A stretch of DNA of 64,000 bases, from positions 252,013 to 316,012 of the IMG/VR virus record IMGVR_UViG_3300021197_001489; one strand, 5' to 3'. A model generated the notes under the pieces. That model was not told the origin of the DNA and searched no databases. It saw nothing but the letters and a program-made list of their open reading frames with translations. Positions 54,575-63,950 of the stretch are shown one piece after another. Position numbers and translations under genes: made by a program. Positions within the stretch are counted from its first letter, which is position 1; each line of letters starts with the position of its first letter.

Positions 54575-57500
54575 ATGGCACAACCAGTTTGGGTAACACC
54601 TGCAGGAGACCTCGGAACTATTGCCGAAAGTTTGTTCTTCCAAGTACCAATTGAAGCAACTGACTCAGATGGCTCAACAGTAAAGTACAGTTTGATAGCT
54701 GGCAAACTTCCTGAAGGTATTCAAGTAACAGAAAACGGTAGCATTGAAGGTGTACCGCTGGCATATGCTAGAGTCAAGGGTGTACCAACTGAAGTTTCTG
54801 AAAACGTAACATCAACATTTGCAGTCCGAGCTACTAGTACAGTTGATAGTCAAATTAACGACAGAACATTTGAGTTAACTGTTACTGGTCAAGATATTCC
54901 AACATTTACTACACCAGCTGGGTCGCTAGGCACATTTTTTGACAGTGATATAATTAATATTACAATTGGGTTTACTGATCAAGATCCTAACGATACTGTG
55001 GTAATCACAGTTGACAACGGAGAATTACCACCCGGATTAACTATCAATCCTACAACTGGTGTGATATCAGGATATATAGTGCCAGTAAGCAATTTGCCTG
55101 ATGATGCTACTTCAGGATTTGATGCTAGTGAATGGGATTTGTATCCGTTTGATTTTTCTACTCGCAGTATAAACAAAACCTATGAATTTACACTGAGCAT
55201 TACAGATGGTAAAGATCAAAATTTAAGAACGTTTTCAATGTATGTGGGCAGTCGCGACAGTTTAACCGCAGACACCACAGACTTTACAGCAGACAGTGAA
55301 GTGTTGACAGCAGATCTGTCGCCACAGCGTACTCCACTTATTACAAATTTCCCAGCAGCGGATCCACCATATGCAGCAGGATTTATTGGCCTGTTTAGAC
55401 ATGACAATTTCTTTGCATACCAAATTCTAGGATTGGATCTTGATGGAGACGCATTTGAATTTGAAATTGCATTAGGAGATTCAAGTGACATTCCCCCTGG
55501 ATTGGTATTTGATAGATTCACAGGTTGGCTAACTGGCTTCTTCCCAGATCAAGGTGCAACAGAAAAAGACTACAGTTTTGCTATCACCATTTACAAAAAA
55601 GACAACAACGCAGTTGTAAGCGAACCTTATAACTATACGATGTCGGTTATAGGCAGTATTGAAAGTTCAGTTACTTGGCTGACCGGCACATTGATTCCAG
55701 ACAGAGATGTGAATGATCCAATATACAGTCTTGGCACAATAGACAACGGCGAAACCAGCATGCTGGCTGTTAAAGCAACCAATCCAAGTGGGCGTTTTTT
55801 ACAATTTAAACTAAAAGCTGGCAGCTATCCAAGCACACCAGGGCAGTACAACTTGCTACCACAAGGGTTGCAACTTTTGGCTAGCGGTGAAATTGCCGGA
55901 CGTGTAAGTTTTAATACCTTTGCAATTGATGGAGGAACAACCACATTTGACAAAAATACCACAACAAGGCTTGAGAACGCTGAAACCACATTTGATAAAG
56001 CCTTTGACTTCACTGTGGTTGCATATAGCAGTGATGGCCTGGTCAGTGTAAGCAGAAAGTTCCGTATCACAGTTGACAGAGCATACAACTCACCATATAA
56101 TGGATTATATATCAAAGCCATGCCGGATCAAGCAGATAGAAATTTTGTAAACAGCCTTTTACAAGACACAGATATCATTCCTCCTAGTCGTGTATATCGT
56201 CCTGATGATCCCTATTTTGGTGTGGCTAAAGATGTGGTATACAATCATGCATACAGTTTAGACACTGCTACACTTGACGAATACTTACTTGCATTAAGCA
56301 AAAACCATTTTCGCAAAAAGATTATTCTTGGACCTATTAAAACAGCACAAGCACTCAATCCCGACGGGTCTGTTGAATACGAAGTTGTTTACAGCGACAT
56401 TGTTGACACAGGAGTGAATAGTTTAGGACAAAGTCCAGCACAAAGTATCACACTTCCTTATCCTGCAACAGTGTACAGCGAAACAGCCACTGAAGCACGA
56501 CAATTGTTTGAAGACAACTTCACCAACGGCAACGTTGCAGATGCAAATGTAACTGCACTGGATCAAATGAGTGTTGCTTACTTGGAAGAGTCAAGAGACC
56601 TAAACATGTTGGCAAACATTGCAAGTCAGATGGCAAAAGATTGGATAGCTGATGGACAACCTGGAGACCCTGCTCCAATATGGACTGGCGATAAGTATAT
56701 TCCAAATCCCAAAGTAAACGATGTGTTCAACTGGACTCCCAGTAACCAATGTCCTGTAAACATGGAAGAGCCGCTTAGATATGACAAATTTAAAACACAG
56801 TTAGCAGCTCTAACAGCCAATGACATAATATGGTGTGATTACACAGTTGAAGTGGATGATAAAGCTGATCCTGAAGGTAAGAAGAAGAAAACTGTTCGCA
56901 GTATTGCTCCTTTTGGATGGCTAATCGAATACGGTGATACTGCGTACATTGTGATGCGTGGTACACAAAATGAATATGATGGCAAGATCGACACCATGGC
57001 AGCCAAAGTTATCAATCCAATTGCTGGATTTGGCAAAGGCAAAACACACAACGGATTTACTATTGCTTACAAAGGGCTTGGTCCAAAAGGCGAAGAGCGT
57101 CCTGCAGATGTCCCAGGTATCAGTTTGTTTGATGCACTAAACAACACCACTAAAACAAAAATCAAAATTGGCGGACACAGCCTTGGCAGTGCAATCAGCA
57201 CACTTATAACCAATTATGCACAAACTTTTAACAAGTTTGACCGCATTGAAGGATATGTAAGCGCATCACCAACAGTGGGCAATCAAAAATACGCCGACTA
57301 TTTCAATGCTCTTCAAGACAAAGACGGCAACATGCTGGGCAACACTTTCTACAGACTCACAAACAAAAATGATATTGTGCCAATGATACCTGGATCATGG
57401 TTACAATATATAGCAGTAGCACAAGAAGTGTTATTTGATGCTCCTTACACTGATCCTGATAACCTTGTAAAAACTGCAAAAAATCATCAGATTTGTTGTT

Positions 57501-58441
57501 GCTATGCGTATGCACTTAAACATCCACTGGATGTATTCAATCCTAGCAATGAAGATTCATCATGCAAGTTCCCTGTTGGACCGGCAAGTCCGGATTATTT
57601 CTCACTGGAACAACATCTTGACAGTTTGATATTGTATTACGGTTCGTGGGTAGATAACCCTGATGGCACAGTTTCCACCACTTTCACTACTGTATACCCA
57701 AACAGTTTGATCAATATGAGAGATCAAGTGATTGATGTAGTAGGACAACAAAGTACAGTACTTCCGCTGTGGATGACCACAAAGCAAACAGACGGCAGAG
57801 TGTTAGGATTTACCAAGGCATGGGTAATTTGCTATGCACAACCTGGTGAAAGTGACCGAATCAGTTACAACATACGCACACAGTTTGGCGAAATATTAAA
57901 CAGAGTAGACTTCATCAGTGATAGATATATCCTGGACAATCAACTAACTGCCGCTTGGGTACCAAACGAAGACTCAACAGACGGCGGCAACTGGAATCCA
58001 AGTCCACCACTTAGCACAACGTTTGATGTCGACTTTTACGTTGACTGGACTGCAATATCAACTGCTATACTTGGAATTGCTGTTGGCCTCACCAATAATT
58101 TAAGTCCAGTTGCAAATGCTGTTACGAGTGGATTTGCCAACGGCGACTTCAACGAAAGTGGTGTTATTACTGCCGCAGATGCACTTGATGCGGCCAAATT
58201 CGGAGCTGATACGTTAGAAGATGGTACTGCAAAAACACGCATCCAAACTATTTTTGAGCCAGCACTAAGACTTGCACGGACTAACGACCCAACAACGTAT
58301 AATGAATATTTTGTTGGTGCAGGAAACACAACCACATTTGATGGCAACAGTTTGAGGTTTACTAGCCCTGTGGATGTTTACGGCAAGACGGACAAGTATG
58401 ATAAATACCTCGTATTCCCCAAGACGAATATTTTAGGATAA
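54575..58441 (+). CDS. Baseplate wedge-like structural protein with inserted class-3 lipase domain
   Basis: Ig/cadherin-like W.TPAG.LG repeats with GxLPxGL; internal IVMRGT, HNGF, GGHSLG, NxNDIVP, NH; wedge-like C-terminus. Confidence 0.8.
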   Translation: MAQPVWVTPAGDLGTIAESLFFQVPIEATDSDGSTVKYSLIAGKLPEGIQVTENGSIEGVPLAYARVKGVPTEVSENVTSTFAVRATSTVDSQINDRTFELTVTGQDIPTFTTPAGSLGTFFDSDIINITIGFTDQDPNDTVVITVDNGELPPGLTINPTTGVISGYIVPVSNLPDDATSGFDASEWDLYPFDFSTRSINKTYEFTLSITDGKDQNLRTFSMYVGSRDSLTADTTDFTADSEVLTADLSPQRTPLITNFPAADPPYAAGFIGLFRHDNFFAYQILGLDLDGDAFEFEIALGDSSDIPPGLVFDRFTGWLTGFFPDQGATEKDYSFAITIYKKDNNAVVSEPYNYTMSVIGSIESSVTWLTGTLIPDRDVNDPIYSLGTIDNGETSMLAVKATNPSGRFLQFKLKAGSYPSTPGQYNLLPQGLQLLASGEIAGRVSFNTFAIDGGTTTFDKNTTTRLENAETTFDKAFDFTVVAYSSDGLVSVSRKFRITVDRAYNSPYNGLYIKAMPDQADRNFVNSLLQDTDIIPPSRVYRPDDPYFGVAKDVVYNHAYSLDTATLDEYLLALSKNHFRKKIILGPIKTAQALNPDGSVEYEVVYSDIVDTGVNSLGQSPAQSITLPYPATVYSETATEARQLFEDNFTNGNVADANVTALDQMSVAYLEESRDLNMLANIASQMAKDWIADGQPGDPAPIWTGDKYIPNPKVNDVFNWTPSNQCPVNMEEPLRYDKFKTQLAALTANDIIWCDYTVEVDDKADPEGKKKKTVRSIAPFGWLIEYGDTAYIVMRGTQNEYDGKIDTMAAKVINPIAGFGKGKTHNGFTIAYKGLGPKGEERPADVPGISLFDALNNTTKTKIKIGGHSLGSAISTLITNYAQTFNKFDRIEGYVSASPTVGNQKYADYFNALQDKDGNMLGNTFYRLTNKNDIVPMIPGSWLQYIAVAQEVLFDAPYTDPDNLVKTAKNHQICCCYAYALKHPLDVFNPSNEDSSCKFPVGPASPDYFSLEQHLDSLILYYGSWVDNPDGTVSTTFTTVYPNSLINMRDQVIDVVGQQSTVLPLWMTTKQTDGRVLGFTKAWVICYAQPGESDRISYNIRTQFGEILNRVDFISDRYILDNQLTAAWVPNEDSTDGGNWNPSPPLSTTFDVDFYVDWTAISTAILGIAVGLTNNLSPVANAVTSGFANGDFNESGVITAADALDAAKFGADTLEDGTAKTRIQTIFEPALRLARTNDPTTYNEYFVGAGNTTTFDGNSLRFTSPVDVYGKTDKYDKYLVFPKTNILG

Positions 58442-59429: not shown

Positions 59430-59840
59430 ATGACACAAGTAGATTTAAATCGTTACAAAGAATTTGTTCAAACAGTAACAAGCGAACAAAGCAATGATAC
59501 AATAGCAATGCATCTGGCAATGACTGAACTAGAAGCAGTTAGTGGTGTTAACATGGCACTGTTGTTGACTGGTGCAGTTGGACTTAGTGCTGAAGGTGGC
59601 GAGTTTATGGAAATTGTAAAGAAGTGCATCTTTCAAGGCAAACCCATGGATGAAGATACGCAGTTCCATGCAAAACGTGAATTGGGAGACATCATGTGGT
59701 ACTGGATTAACAGTTGCCGCGCACTCAACATTGATCCCAATGATGTTATTGAAGAAAATGTACGCAAATTAGAAAAACGCTATCCCGGCGGAAGTTTTGA
59801 TGTGCATTACTCAGAGAACAGACAAGCAGGCGATCTCTAG
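59430..59840 (+). CDS. mazG: MazG-like nucleotide pyrophosphohydrolase
   Basis: GLSAEGGEFMEIVKK, ELGDIMWY, NVRKLEKRYPGG.F. Confidence 0.9.
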   Translation: MTQVDLNRYKEFVQTVTSEQSNDTIAMHLAMTELEAVSGVNMALLLTGAVGLSAEGGEFMEIVKKCIFQGKPMDEDTQFHAKRELGDIMWYWINSCRALNIDPNDVIEENVRKLEKRYPGGSFDVHYSENRQAGDL

Positions 59841-60064
59841 TGGAACATCCGTTAATTGGTAACATTGACGAGCTGTCCGAAAGTGACATCATTGACAAAA
59901 TTACTGAACTTAACAAAAAGTATTACGCAAGTATGAGACTGGGCAACTCCCACTTAACCAATCAAGTAGGAATGGCACTTGAAACATACCGCAACAAACT
60001 GTCGGAAAAGCAGCGTAAGCGCAGTGCCGGCGACGATTTTGAGGATAAAATAAACATATCATGA
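59840..60064 (+). CDS. Small helical hypothetical protein
   Basis: GTG start overlapping the mazG stop. Confidence 0.75.
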   Translation: MEHPLIGNIDELSESDIIDKITELNKKYYASMRLGNSHLTNQVGMALETYRNKLSEKQRKRSAGDDFEDKINIS

Positions 60065-60705
60065 GCTATGTACGGTTAGGGTTCAACCCACAATTTTATG
60101 CAGCAGTTCACACACCCGACGGTATTATTATGAACAGCTATCATGTAGACATGCAAATGGTAACTGTAAGCAATAACAGTTATGATCAAAACATTGCATT
60201 AGCTCGGGTAAAGTATATCATATTTGAACAATTCTGTAACAGCATTTTCATTGACCAAACAGAAACAGACGCAATTGCTGCATACGAAGCAGCAGGGATG
60301 CAGTGCGTTGGCTTTCCTACCGAACCGGTTGATCAAATTGTAGGTCTTGCGTTATACTTAAAGTTAAATGCAGTTATTGAAGATGTAATACAAATATCAG
60401 ATTTGAACTTGCACAGTGACGCCGGCGGCGGTATCACATATCTGCATCACGATGACGAAGAGATAGGACCGTTTGACGACGAAGGGTGGTGGCACGGCAG
60501 TCATCCAACCTGTGCTATTGGAAAACAAAAAGGCAAAGTGGTAACACTAAATGATACAACTTGGAAAAATGTTGATCTAGAATGGGACGACGAAGACGAT
60601 GATGAACCAGAAGTAGAAGTTGAAATCATTGTTGACGGACATATATTTCCAGAAGAATCAGTTACAGAAAATGTTGTAGAATTCAAACCCAATGATAAAA
60701 AATAA
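60061..60705 (+). CDS. Hypothetical protein with acidic tail
   Basis: 214 aa, contiguous in the operon. Confidence 0.8.
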   Translation: MSYVRLGFNPQFYAAVHTPDGIIMNSYHVDMQMVTVSNNSYDQNIALARVKYIIFEQFCNSIFIDQTETDAIAAYEAAGMQCVGFPTEPVDQIVGLALYLKLNAVIEDVIQISDLNLHSDAGGGITYLHHDDEEIGPFDDEGWWHGSHPTCAIGKQKGKVVTLNDTTWKNVDLEWDDEDDDEPEVEVEIIVDGHIFPEESVTENVVEFKPNDKK

Positions 60706-61180
60706 GTTTGGCGAACAAGTATATAATATAGAAGATGTAGTGGATCTCATAATGAGCGATCAAAACATCTCTGGTATCACTGTGGATCAAACAGTAACAA
60801 CACCTGTTGGTGTTGATGTAGAGTTTTGCACACAAACTGTTGAAGATATCAATGTACAAGAATACGACAAGCGCAATCAACAAAACTGGTTGATGCCTGA
60901 TGAATACAAACAGTTAGACATTGCAGCACACATTATTGATTGCTGCAAGACTGATGCTGAACTACAACGTGCAGCACAAGAATTGTTGTTGTTCCAAGAA
61001 CGTGACTTGTTTAACTTGTTACGGTATCTCAAGTATCTAGTAGACACAATGAAATCCAATAGCATCATTTGGGGTGTTGGTCGAGGATCCAGTGTGGCCA
61101 GTTATGTGTTATACTTGCTAGGGGTACACAGAGTTAACAGCATGTACTATGATTTAGACCCCACCGAATTCCTTAGATAA
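60692..61180 (+). CDS. dnaE: Stand-alone fragment of DNA polymerase III alpha
   Basis: R...EL..F...L...L.Y...LVD......WGVGRGSSVASYVLYLLGVHRVN...YDL...EFLR*, matching the DnaE GRGS region. Confidence 0.8.
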   Translation: MIKNKFGEQVYNIEDVVDLIMSDQNISGITVDQTVTTPVGVDVEFCTQTVEDINVQEYDKRNQQNWLMPDEYKQLDIAAHIIDCCKTDAELQRAAQELLLFQERDLFNLLRYLKYLVDTMKSNSIIWGVGRGSSVASYVLYLLGVHRVNSMYYDLDPTEFLR

Positions 61181-61211: not shown

Positions 61212-61679
61212 ATGGCACCAAAACGCACATATCGAACATCGCAAGGCAAGGCGGTTGACCTCGGCGCATTGTTGTTGCAAAATGAAAATGTCAGAGCAGT
61301 TGGCAATATGGGCGTAAATGCCCGCGGTGACAGAATTGACAACAAAGGCAAAGTTGTTGATAGCAAAGTACAGCAGACCAAACGTCAGTACAACAAACAG
61401 ATCGGGCCAGTTGACGAGGTTCCACCAACAAGCCGCCGGGCAGTTGAAGATGTTATGCCAGCGCCAGTTGACAATAGTGCTTCTAAAAAACCAAAGGCCA
61501 AGAAGCCTAAAGTTTCTAAAGCAACGCCAGTTGTAGATGAATCTGTAATTGGTGTGTCGCCGCCATTACCTGCTGGCGGACTTGCTGATGCTATTGCACG
61601 AGCCAGAACTGTTAAACAAGAACAAGCAAAAACCCCAAGACAACTTGCACAAGAAAAAGCTGGAGTGAGAAAAATATAA
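61212..61679 (+). CDS. Basic late hypothetical protein
   Basis: ATAAATA (61177) and AGGAG upstream; AVGNMGVNARGD motif. Confidence 0.8.
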   Translation: MAPKRTYRTSQGKAVDLGALLLQNENVRAVGNMGVNARGDRIDNKGKVVDSKVQQTKRQYNKQIGPVDEVPPTSRRAVEDVMPAPVDNSASKKPKAKKPKVSKATPVVDESVIGVSPPLPAGGLADAIARARTVKQEQAKTPRQLAQEKAGVRKI

Positions 61680-62101
61680 TGGCCAATACACAAAACATTA
61701 ATGCAGTCAAAATCAGTCGTAACGGATTTAAACCTCTACACAGTGATGTCATTGTGGAAGACATGATATTCGGCGAGCGTAGTTTACAAAGCGGTATTAT
61801 TCTGCTCAACGATGATGGACAAGGTCATGGCATTCGTCCACGCTGGGGCAAAGTGTATGCAGTTGGTCCAGAGCAAACTGATGTTGTTCCTGGGCAGTAT
61901 GTAATGGTTGCACATGGACGCTGGAGTCGCGGATACAAGATTCAAGACGATGATGGTGAAACTGTAATCCGCAAAGTTGATCCCAAAGATATGCTCATGG
62001 TCAGTGACGAAGACCCAGGCAATGACGATACACTTAGCGATGCAGTCAGCATTGGCACAAACAGCATGCCAGAATCGAGCAAATTCTACAAAGGCGAATA
62101 G
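61679..62101 (+). CDS. groES: Co-chaperonin GroES
   Basis: FKPLHSDVIV, mobile loop SGIILL, GKVYAVGP, V.PGQYVMV. Confidence 0.88.
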   Translation: MANTQNINAVKISRNGFKPLHSDVIVEDMIFGERSLQSGIILLNDDGQGHGIRPRWGKVYAVGPEQTDVVPGQYVMVAHGRWSRGYKIQDDDGETVIRKVDPKDMLMVSDEDPGNDDTLSDAVSIGTNSMPESSKFYKGE

Positions 62102-62386: not shown

Positions 62387-63304
62387 ATGAAACAATTGTG
62401 GACTGAAAAGTATCGCCCTAAAGACATTGACGGCTATGTGTTTCGCGACAATGAACAAAAGTCACAGGTAAAAAGTTGGATTGATTCAGGTGCTATTCCG
62501 CACTTGTTGTTTAGTGGTGCGCCTGGTGTTGGCAAAACAACACTGGCAAAGATCTTGATCAATCAGTTGGAAATTGACAGCTATGATGTGTTAGAAATTA
62601 ACGCATCAAGAGAAAATTCCATTGACACTATTCGTGACAAGATCACAGGCTTTGTGCAAACCATGCCATTTGGTGATTTCAAGGTTGTACTACTGGATGA
62701 GGCTGATTATATCTCACCAAACGGACAAGCAGCATTGCGTGGTGTGATGGAAACGTATCATGCAAGTGCTAGGTTTATACTGACTTGCAACTATCCCAAC
62801 AGAGTAATTCCTGCACTGCATTCACGTTGCCAAGGCTTCCACATTGAACGTGTTGACCTAACAGAGTTTACTGCAAGAGTTGCAACTGTGTTGGTAGAAG
62901 AAGGTGTTGAATTTGATCTTGACACACTGGACACTTATGTAAGAAGCACATATCCAGATTTGCGTAAATGCTTAAATCTGTGTCAAATGAATTCGCAGGA
63001 TAGTAAACTGGCCAAGCCCAAGGGTGATGAAGGTGCAAGTGCAGACTGGCGCATCAGTGCAGTTGAACTGTTTAAAGCAGGCAAAATCATTGAAGCAAGG
63101 AAGTTAATGTGCAGCACAGTGCGTCCAGAAGAAATGGAAGATGTGTTTCGCTGGATGTATGACAACTTGGAACTGTTTTCGGACTCACAAGAAGGACAAG
63201 ACAGTGCTATTGTGATTATTAAAAATGGCTTGGTCAATCACAGTTTTGTGGCAGATCCTGAGATCAATCTAAGTGCAACAATGGTAGAACTAGCGCAGAT
63301 TTAG
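62387..63304 (+). CDS. Sliding-clamp loader subunit (RFC-small/T4 gp44-like)
   Basis: WTEKYRP, GAPGVGKTT, LEINAS, LLDEAD, FILTCNY, SRC motif. Confidence 0.93.
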   Translation: MKQLWTEKYRPKDIDGYVFRDNEQKSQVKSWIDSGAIPHLLFSGAPGVGKTTLAKILINQLEIDSYDVLEINASRENSIDTIRDKITGFVQTMPFGDFKVVLLDEADYISPNGQAALRGVMETYHASARFILTCNYPNRVIPALHSRCQGFHIERVDLTEFTARVATVLVEEGVEFDLDTLDTYVRSTYPDLRKCLNLCQMNSQDSKLAKPKGDEGASADWRISAVELFKAGKIIEARKLMCSTVRPEEMEDVFRWMYDNLELFSDSQEGQDSAIVIIKNGLVNHSFVADPEINLSATMVELAQI

Positions 63305-63362: not shown

Positions 63363-63950
63363 ATGAAATATCAAAAAACAATACTCACAGATGTCGATGG
63401 CGTACTATTAGACTGGGAGTGGGCCTTTAACGTCTGGATGCAAGAACACGGATTCGAACTTACTGATGGTTATCAGTATGAATACGATATGTCTCTACGC
63501 TATGGTATTAGCAAGGAGCAAGTTCGCAAACTGATACGCACCTTTAATGAAAGTGCTGCGATAGGCTTCCTCCCGGTCTTGCGTGATGCCATGTACTGGG
63601 TCAAAAGACTGCACGAGCAACATGGTTTTACATTTCACTGTATTACCAGTCTCAGCCTTGACCAAAATGCAGGCAAACTGCGTGAAATGAATCTTCAAAA
63701 AATGTTTGGTAAAACTGCTTTTTCTAAAGTTCTGTGCTTGGACACAGGCGCAGACAAGCATGATGCACTTCGTGAGTACAATAACTCAGGATGTTGGTGG
63801 ATTGAAGACAAACCAGAAAACGCGGATGTTGGACTTGAGTATGGATTGAAGCCATTACTTATGGAACACGGTCACAACATGATGGCTGATGTTCACTATC
63901 CCATTGTAAAGAATTGGGAAGATATCTACAGACTTGTAACAAAACTTTAA
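63363..63950 (+). CDS. HAD-superfamily 5'(3')-deoxyribonucleotidase-like protein
   Basis: ILTDVDGVL, CITS, GADK, WIEDK. Confidence 0.88.
   Translation: MKYQKTILTDVDGVLLDWEWAFNVWMQEHGFELTDGYQYEYDMSLRYGISKEQVRKLIRTFNESAAIGFLPVLRDAMYWVKRLHEQHGFTFHCITSLSLDQNAGKLREMNLQKMFGKTAFSKVLCLDTGADKHDALREYNNSGCWWIEDKPENADVGLEYGLKPLLMEHGHNMMADVHYPIVKNWEDIYRLVTKL

What the first reader, a model, noticed from the sequence alone, without database searches (positions are those of the whole stretch)
60692..61180. DnaE fragment that stops immediately before the catalytic aspartates
Seen: a cleanly started and stopped 162-aa ORF with the GRGS motif, ending EFLR*. Known: in DnaE the equivalent FERFL is followed within ~10 residues by the catalytic PDxDxD. 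No intein or frameshifted continuation is evident downstream. Inference: a naturally split, intein-free C-family polymerase whose other chain is encoded elsewhere, used alongside an RFC/gp44-type clamp loader rather than DnaX.
Basis: partly seen in the sequence, partly recalled or inferred. Interest (0 to 1): 0.6.

Follow-up and report, generated by a model that had tools for sequence, protein, structure and literature searches.

The report
N-half of split mini Pol III
This 162-residue gene is the N-terminal half of a miniature, two-gene version of the bacterial replicative polymerase's catalytic core, carried by a large clade of T4-related jumbo phages; the split was predicted by computation in 2021, so this is a new marine member of a known but biochemically untested oddity.

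Summary
The ORF at 60692..61180 (+) is real: 162 aa, GRGS motif, ending EFLR*. It matches the DnaE palm (PF07733 positions 24-94) and, end to end, a short phage family (phrog_11127).

The predicted missing half exists. It is a 186-aa ORF about 91 kb upstream, outside the window, that begins MSADVDIDF and keeps the third Asp and the finger motifs (phrog_11778).

- The two genes co-occur in 95 and 96 isolated phage records, and in all ten genomes checked individually.
- Both are under strong purifying selection (dN/dS about 0.1).
- All 62 relatives of the N-piece stop at the same position.
- A complex prediction (0.90 against a best control of 0.01) pairs the strand before GRGS with the DxD strand.
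- A rare natural fusion (375-376 aa) joins the two halves in the predicted order.

The pair lacks the PHP domain, the thumb, most of the fingers and all C-terminal domains, so DNA polymerase activity is inferred, not shown. The genome also encodes a family B polymerase and a 564-aa single-chain DnaE-like gene without a PHP domain. No link to the clamp loader is shown.

Iyer et al. 2021 (PMC7824862) already described this split minimal Pol III alpha in group 2.2 jumbo phages. This is a new member of a known kind.

The parts
60692..61180 (+). N-piece: the N-terminal (NTP-binding) subunit of the split minimal Pol III alpha-like enzyme, 162 aa
   Evidence: ORF confirmed. PF07733 positions 24-94, E 1.1e-7. 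phrog_11127 matched end to end, E 7.7e-43. dN/dS median 0.11. Predicted to bind the C-piece, score 0.90 against best control 0.01.
61073..61093 (+). G128-V-G-R-G-S-S134, the Gly-Ser (NTP-binding) motif of the Pol beta-type palm
   Evidence: G128, G130, R131, G132, S133 and S134 are invariant in 18 diverse homologues. The motif aligns with E. coli alpha GPGRGSG. Residues 123-136 lie in the predicted interface against C-piece residues 2-10.
61166..61180 (+). E-F-L-R plus the TAA stop: the conserved break point, in the loop before the catalytic DxD strand
   Evidence: E159, F160 and L161 are invariant. The stop is at the same position in 62 of 62 IMG/VR relatives. It aligns with E. coli ...ERFL392.
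61212..61679 (+). 155-aa K/R-rich ORF of unknown function (phrog_14844), always the next gene after the N-piece. It may be a partner or may only reflect conserved core gene order.
   Evidence: A homologue lies downstream in 61 of 61 IMG/VR loci with enough sequence, starting 15-49 nt after the N-piece stop in all but one. The gene order is also conserved in PA5oct, Phosso and 121Q. Role untested.
61679..62101 (+). GroES/gp31-like co-chaperonin, part of the conserved gene order (context only)
   Evidence: PF00166, E 2e-4. phrog_931, E 5e-10. Present in 61 of 62 loci.
62387..63304 (+). gp44/RFC-type clamp-loader ATPase (context only; no link to the mini Pol III is shown)
   Evidence: phrog_168, E 1.7e-77. 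AAA and DNA_pol3_delta2 domains.

Best explanation
The ORF encodes one of two subunits of a heterodimeric, minimal Pol III alpha-type (Pol beta-fold) nucleotidyltransferase. The N-piece supplies an N-terminal extension, the helices before the palm, the first palm strand, the Gly-Ser NTP-binding loop and the following helices up to ...EFL. The C-piece is 186 aa and lies at G000:C1:221183-221743, about 91 kb upstream and outside the window. It supplies the DxD strand at its very N-terminus, the third catalytic Asp (KxD) and remnants of the fingers (IIRPGK, FKKSH..Y). The two chains associate non-covalently, without an intein: the N-piece strand before GRGS pairs with the C-piece DVDIDF strand to complete the palm sheet and a composite active site. 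Shown here: homology of each piece, order along DnaE, co-occurrence, purifying selection, a conserved break point and a natural fusion. Predicted: the assembly. Inferred: that the dimer polymerises DNA, most likely as a low-processivity auxiliary (repair or gap-filling) enzyme beside the phage's family B replicase, as Iyer et al. 2021 suggested.
For: Homology and order. The N-piece matches PF07733 positions 24-94 and phrog_11127. The C-piece matches phrog_11778 end to end, E 3.7e-56. On the full-length DnaE profile phrog_405 the N-piece falls at 389-431 and the C-piece at 572-681. On E. coli alpha the N-piece covers 344-392, and the C-piece covers 403-423, 535-558 (KFD555), 616-641 and 749-766.
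Conserved residues. GxGRGSS and EFL are invariant in the N-piece. D4, D6, D8, K65, D67, IIRPGK and FKKxH..Y are invariant in the C-piece.
Break point. 62 of 62 N-pieces stop after EFL[RK] or EFLHD, and all 80 C-pieces carry M(S)ADVDIDF at or near the start.
Co-occurrence. The pieces occur in 95 and 96 phage records with near-identical genus tallies. Both pieces are present in PA5oct, 121Q, Phosso, five near-complete IMG/VR contigs, a 328-kb contig and this genome.
Selection. Median dN/dS is 0.11 for the N-piece and 0.10 for the C-piece.
Assembly. The complex prediction scores 0.90 in three runs against a best control of 0.01, a mark reached by 58 of 80 solved complexes and 2 of 110 mismatched pairs. 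The runs agree in at least 95% of contacts and the partner pLDDT is at least 89. N-piece residues 127-128 touch C-piece residues 7-9. N-piece pLDDT is 90 with its partner and 61-64 with unrelated partners.
Natural fusion. P0161, P0271 and P0272 (375-376 aa) join the N-piece and C-piece in that order through an 11-residue linker.
Fold. The top 15 PDB matches of the C-piece model are all Pol III alpha.
Context. Both genes lie in replication modules.
Prior description. Iyer et al. 2021, PMC7824862.
Against: No biochemical evidence exists for assembly or for any activity. The pair lacks the PHP domain. It lacks the thumb: about 22 residues separate DxD from the KH..G strand, against about 105 in E. 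coli. It lacks the finger stretch between RPG and KSH: 27 residues against about 115. It also lacks everything after about E. coli residue 776. From memory, the deleted finger stretch holds dNTP-contacting motifs of DnaE, so templated synthesis is uncertain. In the HMMER alignment the invariant E159 aligns with E. coli R390. Matches to solved structures are weak (sequence E about 0.02; Foldseek E 6e-3 or weaker). The complex score may partly reflect the model's memory of the single-chain DnaE fold, and my own alignments were used. Transcription is not proven: RNA-library contigs of relatives cover the gene, but DNA carry-over is possible.
Confidence: 0.8

Rival explanations
1. The two chains do assemble, but the enzyme is not a templated DNA polymerase. 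It would be a different Pol beta-fold nucleotidyltransferase, for example one that adds nucleotides without a template, tails primers, or modifies or signals with nucleotides.
For: The thumb, most of the fingers and all DNA- and clamp-binding C-terminal domains are absent. PF17657 matches only positions 52-82 of 166. The phage already has a family B replicase, and in this genome a complete 564-aa DnaE-like enzyme as well.
Against: It keeps DnaE-specific finger motifs (IIRPGK, FKKSH..Y) as invariant residues, which a non-polymerase transferase would not be expected to need. Both genes sit among helicase, primase, topoisomerase and clamp-loader genes.
Confidence: 0.3
2. The ORF is a truncated, decaying remnant of a DnaE gene (a pseudogene), as the CBB genome paper implied by calling its 172-aa homologue 'truncated'.
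For: It is about one seventh the length of a bacterial DnaE and lacks the catalytic aspartates.
Against: The stop is at the same position in 62 of 62 relatives. dN/dS is 0.11. Gene order is conserved from marine phages to PA5oct, 121Q and Phosso. It co-occurs strictly with the complementary piece.
Confidence: 0.02
3. The N-piece is a stand-alone regulator or decoy that acts on another polymerase (the 564-aa DnaE-like protein or the host's Pol III alpha) and is not half of an enzyme.
For: The 564-aa protein has its own copy of the same segment: 26% identity over 69 aa, N-piece 93-161 against 28-93. A fragment carrying only the GS loop could in principle compete for partners.
Against: PA5oct, 121Q, Phosso and five near-complete IMG/VR genomes have the N-piece but no second PF07733 gene. 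The N-piece tracks the C-piece instead. A natural N+C fusion exists. The predicted interface completes a palm sheet.
Confidence: 0.05
4. The halves are joined covalently, either by a split intein (as in cyanobacterial DnaE) or by recoding (frameshift or read-through) into a downstream continuation.
For: Split inteins are known in DnaE and in polymerase genes of related phages, for example the split PolB with an intein in MIJ3.
Against: There is no room for intein halves: nothing follows EFLR, and only M-S-A precedes DVDIDF. The genes lie tens of kb to over 200 kb apart in the genomes examined. The downstream ORF is unrelated. The stop is conserved.
Confidence: 0.01

Closest known systems
[quoted passage not shown]
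   Same: It has the same architecture: an N-terminal NTP-binding unit and a C-terminal Mg2+/template-binding unit, encoded by distant genes, in T4-related jumbo phages that also carry a family B polymerase. The same families are found in the phages that paper names, 121Q and Atu_ph07.
   Different: This copy is from an uncultured marine jumbo phage. Its genome also carries a complete single-chain DnaE-like gene without a PHP domain, whereas the paper states that phages with the split version lack other Pol III domains. The fused lineage, the selection figures and the complex prediction are additions made here.
Bacterial DnaE / Pol III alpha (E. coli 2HNH, Taq 2HPI/3E0D)
   Same: It shares the Pol beta-type palm with the GS loop, DxD, a third Asp after Lys, and the RPG and KSH finger motifs, all in the same order. 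The top structural matches of the C-piece model are all Pol III alpha.
   Different: It is two chains totalling about 350 aa, not one chain of about 1160 aa. It has no PHP domain, no thumb, a much reduced finger domain, and no beta-binding, HhH, OB or tau-binding domains.
Single-chain phage DnaE-like polymerases without a PHP domain (phrog_405 / phrog_11165; here the 564-aa ORF at G000:C1:228311-230005)
   Same: They are phage-encoded and PHP-less, and they have the same palm motifs.
   Different: They are one chain with a full palm (PF07733 positions 16-260) and full fingers (PF17657 positions 20-158). They are only distantly related to the split pieces (26% identity over 69 aa).
Intein-split DnaE of cyanobacteria (DnaE-n / DnaE-c with a split intein)
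   Same: A C-family polymerase is encoded by two distant genes.
   Different: There the halves are ligated by protein trans-splicing, at a different site, to give a full-length DnaE (general knowledge; cited). Here no intein sequence is present.
Split family B polymerases of T4-related phages (for example the split PolB with an intein in MIJ3/PA5oct-like phages; PMC6892783)
   Same: A phage polymerase is encoded in separate genes, within the same phage clade.
   Different: These belong to a different polymerase family. Their pieces are adjacent and in that case interrupted by an intein and a homing endonuclease.

Membership tests
Split minimal Pol III alpha of group 2.2 jumbo phages (Iyer et al. 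2021) | Stand-alone N-terminal unit with the NTP-binding GS motif that ends before the catalytic DxD | tested here: met
   162 aa, GRGS at residues 130-133, ends EFLR*. phrog_11127 matched end to end.
Split minimal Pol III alpha of group 2.2 jumbo phages (Iyer et al. 2021) | Separate C-terminal unit carrying the Mg2+-binding Asp residues and the template-binding remnant | tested here: met
   186-aa ORF at G000:C1:221183-221743 starting MSADVDIDF. D4, D6, D8, K65, D67, IIRPGK and FKKxH are invariant. phrog_11778, E 3.7e-56.
Split minimal Pol III alpha of group 2.2 jumbo phages (Iyer et al. 2021) | The two genes are distantly located in the genome | tested here: met
   About 91 kb apart in this genome and in a 328-kb relative. 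About 31 kb apart in 121Q, 44 kb in PA5oct and 224 kb in Phosso.
Split minimal Pol III alpha of group 2.2 jumbo phages (Iyer et al. 2021) | Host genome is a T4-related jumbo phage with a classic family B polymerase | tested here: met
   316-kb record. PolB frame of 888 aa. UvsW-like helicase, DnaG-type primase and DnaB/gp41-type helicase. gp44-type clamp loader and GroES-like gene.
Split minimal Pol III alpha of group 2.2 jumbo phages (Iyer et al. 2021) | No other Pol III domains in the genome (as stated in the paper) | tested here: not met
   A 564-aa DnaE-like ORF with a full palm and fingers is present and is common in marine relatives. It is absent from PA5oct, 121Q, Phosso and five other contigs. 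This is a descriptive generalisation, not a defining trait.
C-family replicative DNA polymerase (DnaE/PolC) | PHP domain at the N-terminus | tested here: not met
   No PF02811 match anywhere in the genome at E <= 10, while the control genomes score 14 of 14.
C-family replicative DNA polymerase (DnaE/PolC) | Pol beta-type palm with the GS motif and three catalytic Asp | tested here: met
   Present, but divided between two chains. All the motifs are invariant and map to E. coli 344-392, about 401-405 and K553-x-D555.
C-family replicative DNA polymerase (DnaE/PolC) | Thumb and complete finger domains | tested here: not met
   About 22 residues where E. coli has about 105 (the thumb). 27 residues between RPG and KSH where E. 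coli has about 115. PF17657 is matched only at positions 52-82 of 166 and below the cut-off.
C-family replicative DNA polymerase (DnaE/PolC) | Clamp-binding, HhH and OB C-terminal domains | tested here: not met
   The C-piece ends at about E. coli residue 776. No further domain appears in Pfam.
C-family replicative DNA polymerase (DnaE/PolC) | Template-directed DNA synthesis | not testable with these tools
   Needs biochemistry. No report was found.
Intein-split DnaE | Split-intein halves flanking the break | tested here: not met
   The N-piece ends at EFLR*. The C-piece has three residues before DVDIDF.

The most novel reading that the evidence does not exclude
The two chains form the smallest active C-family DNA polymerase known: about 350 aa, non-covalently assembled, with no PHP domain, thumb or clamp-binding region. 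In this marine lineage it would work beside both a family B replicase and a separate, laterally spreading DnaE without a PHP domain. That would make three polymerase systems with divided labour in one phage. The always-adjacent 155-aa basic protein might act as a DNA-binding third subunit that replaces the missing thumb and C-terminal domains.
Probability: 0.3. Interest if true: 0.6.

Novelty: new member of a known kind. Interest (0 to 1): 0.35.

Why it matters
If the pair is active, it defines the minimal catalytic core of the bacterial replicase family. It would also show that a Pol beta-type palm can be built from two polypeptides. Iyer et al. proposed it as a model of the ancestral enzyme. 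The family is very abundant in marine viromes (thousands of sequence clusters), yet it is annotated inconsistently as 'DNA polymerase III alpha', 'truncated', 'membrane protein' or 'hypothetical'. Recognising the pair corrects those annotations. The natural fusion offers a convenient single-chain construct for biochemistry. For this scan, the finding is a correct rediscovery and not a new system.

Tried and rejected
(1) Simple complementation by the strongest second DnaE hit. The 564-aa ORF turned out to have its own GS segment and DxD, so it is a separate complete enzyme and not the partner.
(2) The pseudogene, decoy, intein and recoding readings were rejected (see the rival explanations).
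(3) A single-chain model of the fused protein P0161 with a deep alignment. MAFFT twice placed the N-pieces on the C-half (A3 and A4), so the fold was not run.
(4) The Foldseek search of the C-piece model gave only weak E-values (6e-3 or weaker), although all 15 top hits were Pol III alpha. Profile searches against PDB sequences were also weak (E about 0.02) but in the same order as DnaE.
(5) A search for a gp45-type clamp (PF09116) found nothing. This says little, because such clamps diverge quickly.
(6) The literature was searched for experimental follow-up and none was found.
(7) RNA evidence. Only assembled contigs of about 91%-identical relatives in two metatranscriptome runs from one study cover the gene, which does not prove transcription.

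No alternative genetic code was used. The costly exhaustive protein search was used once, to ask whether unsplit relatives exist.

Full report
**Observation.** The window is G000:C1:252013-316012 of a 316,012-bp IMG/VR phage record estimated at 91% complete. It overlaps the stop of the upstream 214-aa ORF by 14 nt. It passes Pfam's cut-off for the DnaE palm family PF07733 (32.3 bits against 23.9, E 1.1e-7, residues 91-161, profile positions 24-94 of 260). It also matches a short phage family, phrog_11127 (171 positions), from end to end at E 7.7e-43. So the short form is itself a recognised family.

**First lead, and why it was wrong.** A search of the whole genome with PF07733 found a second, much stronger match. 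This is a 564-aa ORF at G000:C1:228311-230005 (-) with a full palm (positions 16-260) and fingers (PF17657 positions 20-158), and no PHP domain anywhere in the genome. That protein has its own copy of the segment the N-piece carries (26% identity over 69 aa; N-piece 93-161 against 28-93), followed directly by its own DxDxD. It is therefore a complete enzyme and not the missing half. The genome also has an 888-aa family B polymerase frame and no family A polymerase.

**The complementary piece.** A sub-threshold finger-domain hit lies in a 186-aa ORF at G000:C1:221183-221743 (+), about 91 kb upstream of the N-piece and outside the window.
- It begins M-S-A-D-V-D-I-D-F and continues through G-Y-F-K-L-D-L-L, I-I-R-P-G-K and F-K-K-S-H-A-I-S-Y-A.
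- It matches phrog_11778 (197 positions) end to end at E 3.7e-56.
- On the full-length DnaE profile phrog_405 the N-piece maps to 389-431 and the C-piece to 572-681.
- Family profiles map onto E. coli Pol III alpha in the same order. The N-piece covers 344-392 (ending ...ERFL). The C-piece covers 403-423, 535-558 (its K65-x-D67 on K553-F-D555), 616-641 (RPG) and 749-766 (NKSH).
- These PDB matches are individually weak (E about 0.02) but consistent with each other.
- The break therefore falls in the loop between the helix ending ERFL and the catalytic strand.

**What is missing.** Relative to DnaE the pair lacks:
- the PHP domain;
- the thumb, with about 22 residues where E. coli has about 105;
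- the finger stretch between RPG and KSH, with 27 residues against about 115;
- everything beyond about residue 776, which includes the clamp-binding, HhH and OB domains.

**Is it one unit?**
- *Co-occurrence.* tblastn finds the N-piece in 95 phage records and the C-piece in 96, with near-identical genus tallies.
- *Genomes checked individually.* PA5oct, 121Q, Phosso, five near-complete IMG/VR contigs and a 328-kb contig each have both pieces. PA5oct, 121Q, Phosso and the five contigs have no other PF07733 gene.
- *Spacing.* The genes are always far apart, from about 31 kb to about 224 kb.
- *Break point.* All 62 IMG/VR N-pieces stop after EFL[RK] (one after EFLHD). All 80 C-pieces carry M(S)ADVDIDF at or near the start.
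- *Invariant residues.* GxGRGSS and EFL are invariant in the N-piece. D4, D6, D8, H33, G36, K65, D67, IIRPGK and FKKxH..Y are invariant in the C-piece.
- *Selection.* Nei-Gojobori dN/dS over pairs with 0.1 < dS < 1.5 has a median of 0.11 for the N-piece (88 pairs) and 0.10 for the C-piece (1601 pairs).

**Predicted assembly.** The complex prediction supports binding but does not show it.
- The score is 0.90 in each of three runs, against a best control of 0.01. In the tool's calibration this mark was reached by 58 of 80 solved complexes and 2 of 110 mismatched pairs. Those counts hold only roughly here, because my own alignments were used.
- The runs agree in at least 95% of contacts, and the partner pLDDT is at least 89.
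- The lowest-error contacts put N-piece residues 127-128, the strand just before GRGS, against C-piece residues 7-9, the DVDIDF strand. That is the sheet pairing of a Pol beta-type palm.
- A second interface joins N-piece residues 59-68, which include the invariant W66, M68 and P69, to C-piece residues 39-42 and 61-64.
- N-piece pLDDT falls from 90 to 61-64 when its partner is replaced by an unrelated protein.
- The pass may owe something to the model's memory of single-chain DnaE.
- The C-piece modelled alone (pLDDT 80) finds only Pol III alpha chains among its top 15 PDB matches, at weak E-values.

**A natural fusion.**
- The exhaustive profile search was used once, because the 'split' reading depends on whether unsplit relatives exist. 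It found 498 representatives at E <= 0.001. Among the best 150, the full-length ones are almost all about 185-215 aa and start at the DxD motif.
- One exception, P0161 (375 aa), carries the C-piece at residues 190-373. Its residues 10-181 match the N-piece profile (hhalign probability 99.4%, E 1.3e-21), and an 11-residue linker joins ...EFIKD to DFDID.
- Two more clusters, P0271 and P0272 (376 aa, 78-81% identical), come from other assemblies.
- In a 106-tip tree the fused forms are one clade (SH-aLRT 100). That clade is nested in a clade of 12 (SH-aLRT 98) whose other nine members are stand-alone C-pieces, ten nodes from the midpoint root. The fusion therefore looks secondary, but the root is only a midpoint root.
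- The fused gene sits at the C-piece locus: its downstream 315-aa gene is homologous to the gene that follows the C-piece here and in 121Q.

**Context.** The N-piece lies in the order MazG ... N-piece, 155-aa ORF, GroES-like gene, gp44-type clamp loader, phosphatase. This order is conserved in PA5oct, Phosso and 121Q. The 155-aa ORF follows the N-piece in 61 of 61 informative IMG/VR loci. The C-piece lies between a UvsW-like helicase and the DnaG-type primase and gp41-type helicase, both here and in 121Q and PA5oct. Both genes are thus in replication modules. No gp45-type clamp was detected with PF09116, and nothing ties the mini-enzyme to the clamp loader beyond proximity.

**Presence in nature.** All 8000 scored clusters (at 90% identity) have E <= 0.001, and the 120 listed are 157-162 aa, many from Tara and other marine sources. 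The window's stretch is held near-identically by seawater metagenomes from several studies. Two marine metatranscriptome runs from one study hold contigs of relatives about 91% identical. One 827-nt contig spans 60874-61470, across the stop and into the next ORF. This is compatible with transcription but does not prove it.

[quoted passage not shown] They suggested it may cooperate with the family B enzyme in synthesis of one strand or in repair. The CBB genome paper had earlier noted a 'truncated' 172-aa Pol III alpha. I found no experimental follow-up.

**Verdict.** The finding is a correct rediscovery and a new, marine member of that kind. The additions made here are the selection figures, the strict break-point conservation, the predicted interface, the fused lineage, and the co-resident 564-aa DnaE-like gene. 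That gene has 329 IMG/VR relatives. It is 93% identical on a contig where the split pieces are only 71-72% identical, and it is absent from other relatives. Its presence contradicts the paper's generalisation that such phages have no other Pol III domains.

**Confidence.** I put 0.8 on the N-piece being one subunit of a two-chain Pol III alpha-type nucleotidyltransferase with a composite active site. I put about 0.45 on that enzyme being a template-directed DNA polymerase, because the thumb and much of the finger domain are missing.

Noticed in passing
outside the window: G000:C1:228311-230005 (-) = L001:493-2187: A 564-aa single-chain DnaE-like polymerase without a PHP domain (full palm and fingers), on the opposite strand right after the gp41/DnaB-type helicase gene. 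It has 329 IMG/VR relatives and is 93-100% identical on contigs where the split pieces are only 71-94% identical. It is absent from G001-G005, PA5oct, 121Q and Phosso. The pattern suggests a laterally spreading accessory gene.
   Followed up: partly
window 61212-61679 (+): A 155-aa K/R-rich ORF (phrog_14844, function unknown) follows the N-piece in 61 of 61 informative IMG/VR loci, starting 15-49 nt after its stop in all but one, and also in PA5oct, 121Q and Phosso. It could be a third partner or only conserved gene order.
   Followed up: partly
L167:1066-2193 and L251:519-1649 (metagenome contigs): A small lineage (P0161, P0271, P0272; 375-376 aa) carries the N- and C-pieces fused in one ORF through an 11-residue linker, at the C-piece locus. 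The tree suggests a secondary fusion.
   Followed up: yes
window 54575-58441 (+): A 1288-aa ORF combining He_PIG Ig-like repeats (E 2e-13) with an embedded class 3 lipase domain (PF01764, E 3e-16, residues 791-940, GHSLG elbow). It is possibly a virion or tail-fibre-associated esterase.
   Followed up: partly
window 60061-60705 (+): A 214-aa acidic-tailed ORF with no Pfam match overlaps the N-piece start by 14 nt (possible translational coupling). Homologues lie upstream of the N-piece in only 24 of 62 loci.
   Followed up: partly
window 59430-59840 (+), 61679-62101 (+), 63363-63950 (+): A MazG-like pyrophosphatase, a GroES/gp31-like co-chaperonin and a phosphatase-like gene (phrog_420, function unknown; its counterparts in 121Q and Phosso are annotated as phosphatases) flank the locus in an order conserved from marine phages to 121Q, PA5oct and Phosso.
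   Followed up: partly
whole genome G000: No gp45-type sliding clamp was found with PF09116 although a gp44-type clamp loader is present (window 62387-63304). The clamp may be too divergent for the model.
   Followed up: partly
public phage records: Annotation of the two pieces is inconsistent. The N-piece is variously called 'DNA polymerase III alpha', 'DNA polymerase' or 'hypothetical'. The C-piece is called 'hypothetical', 'putative membrane protein' or 'DNA polymerase'.
   Followed up: no
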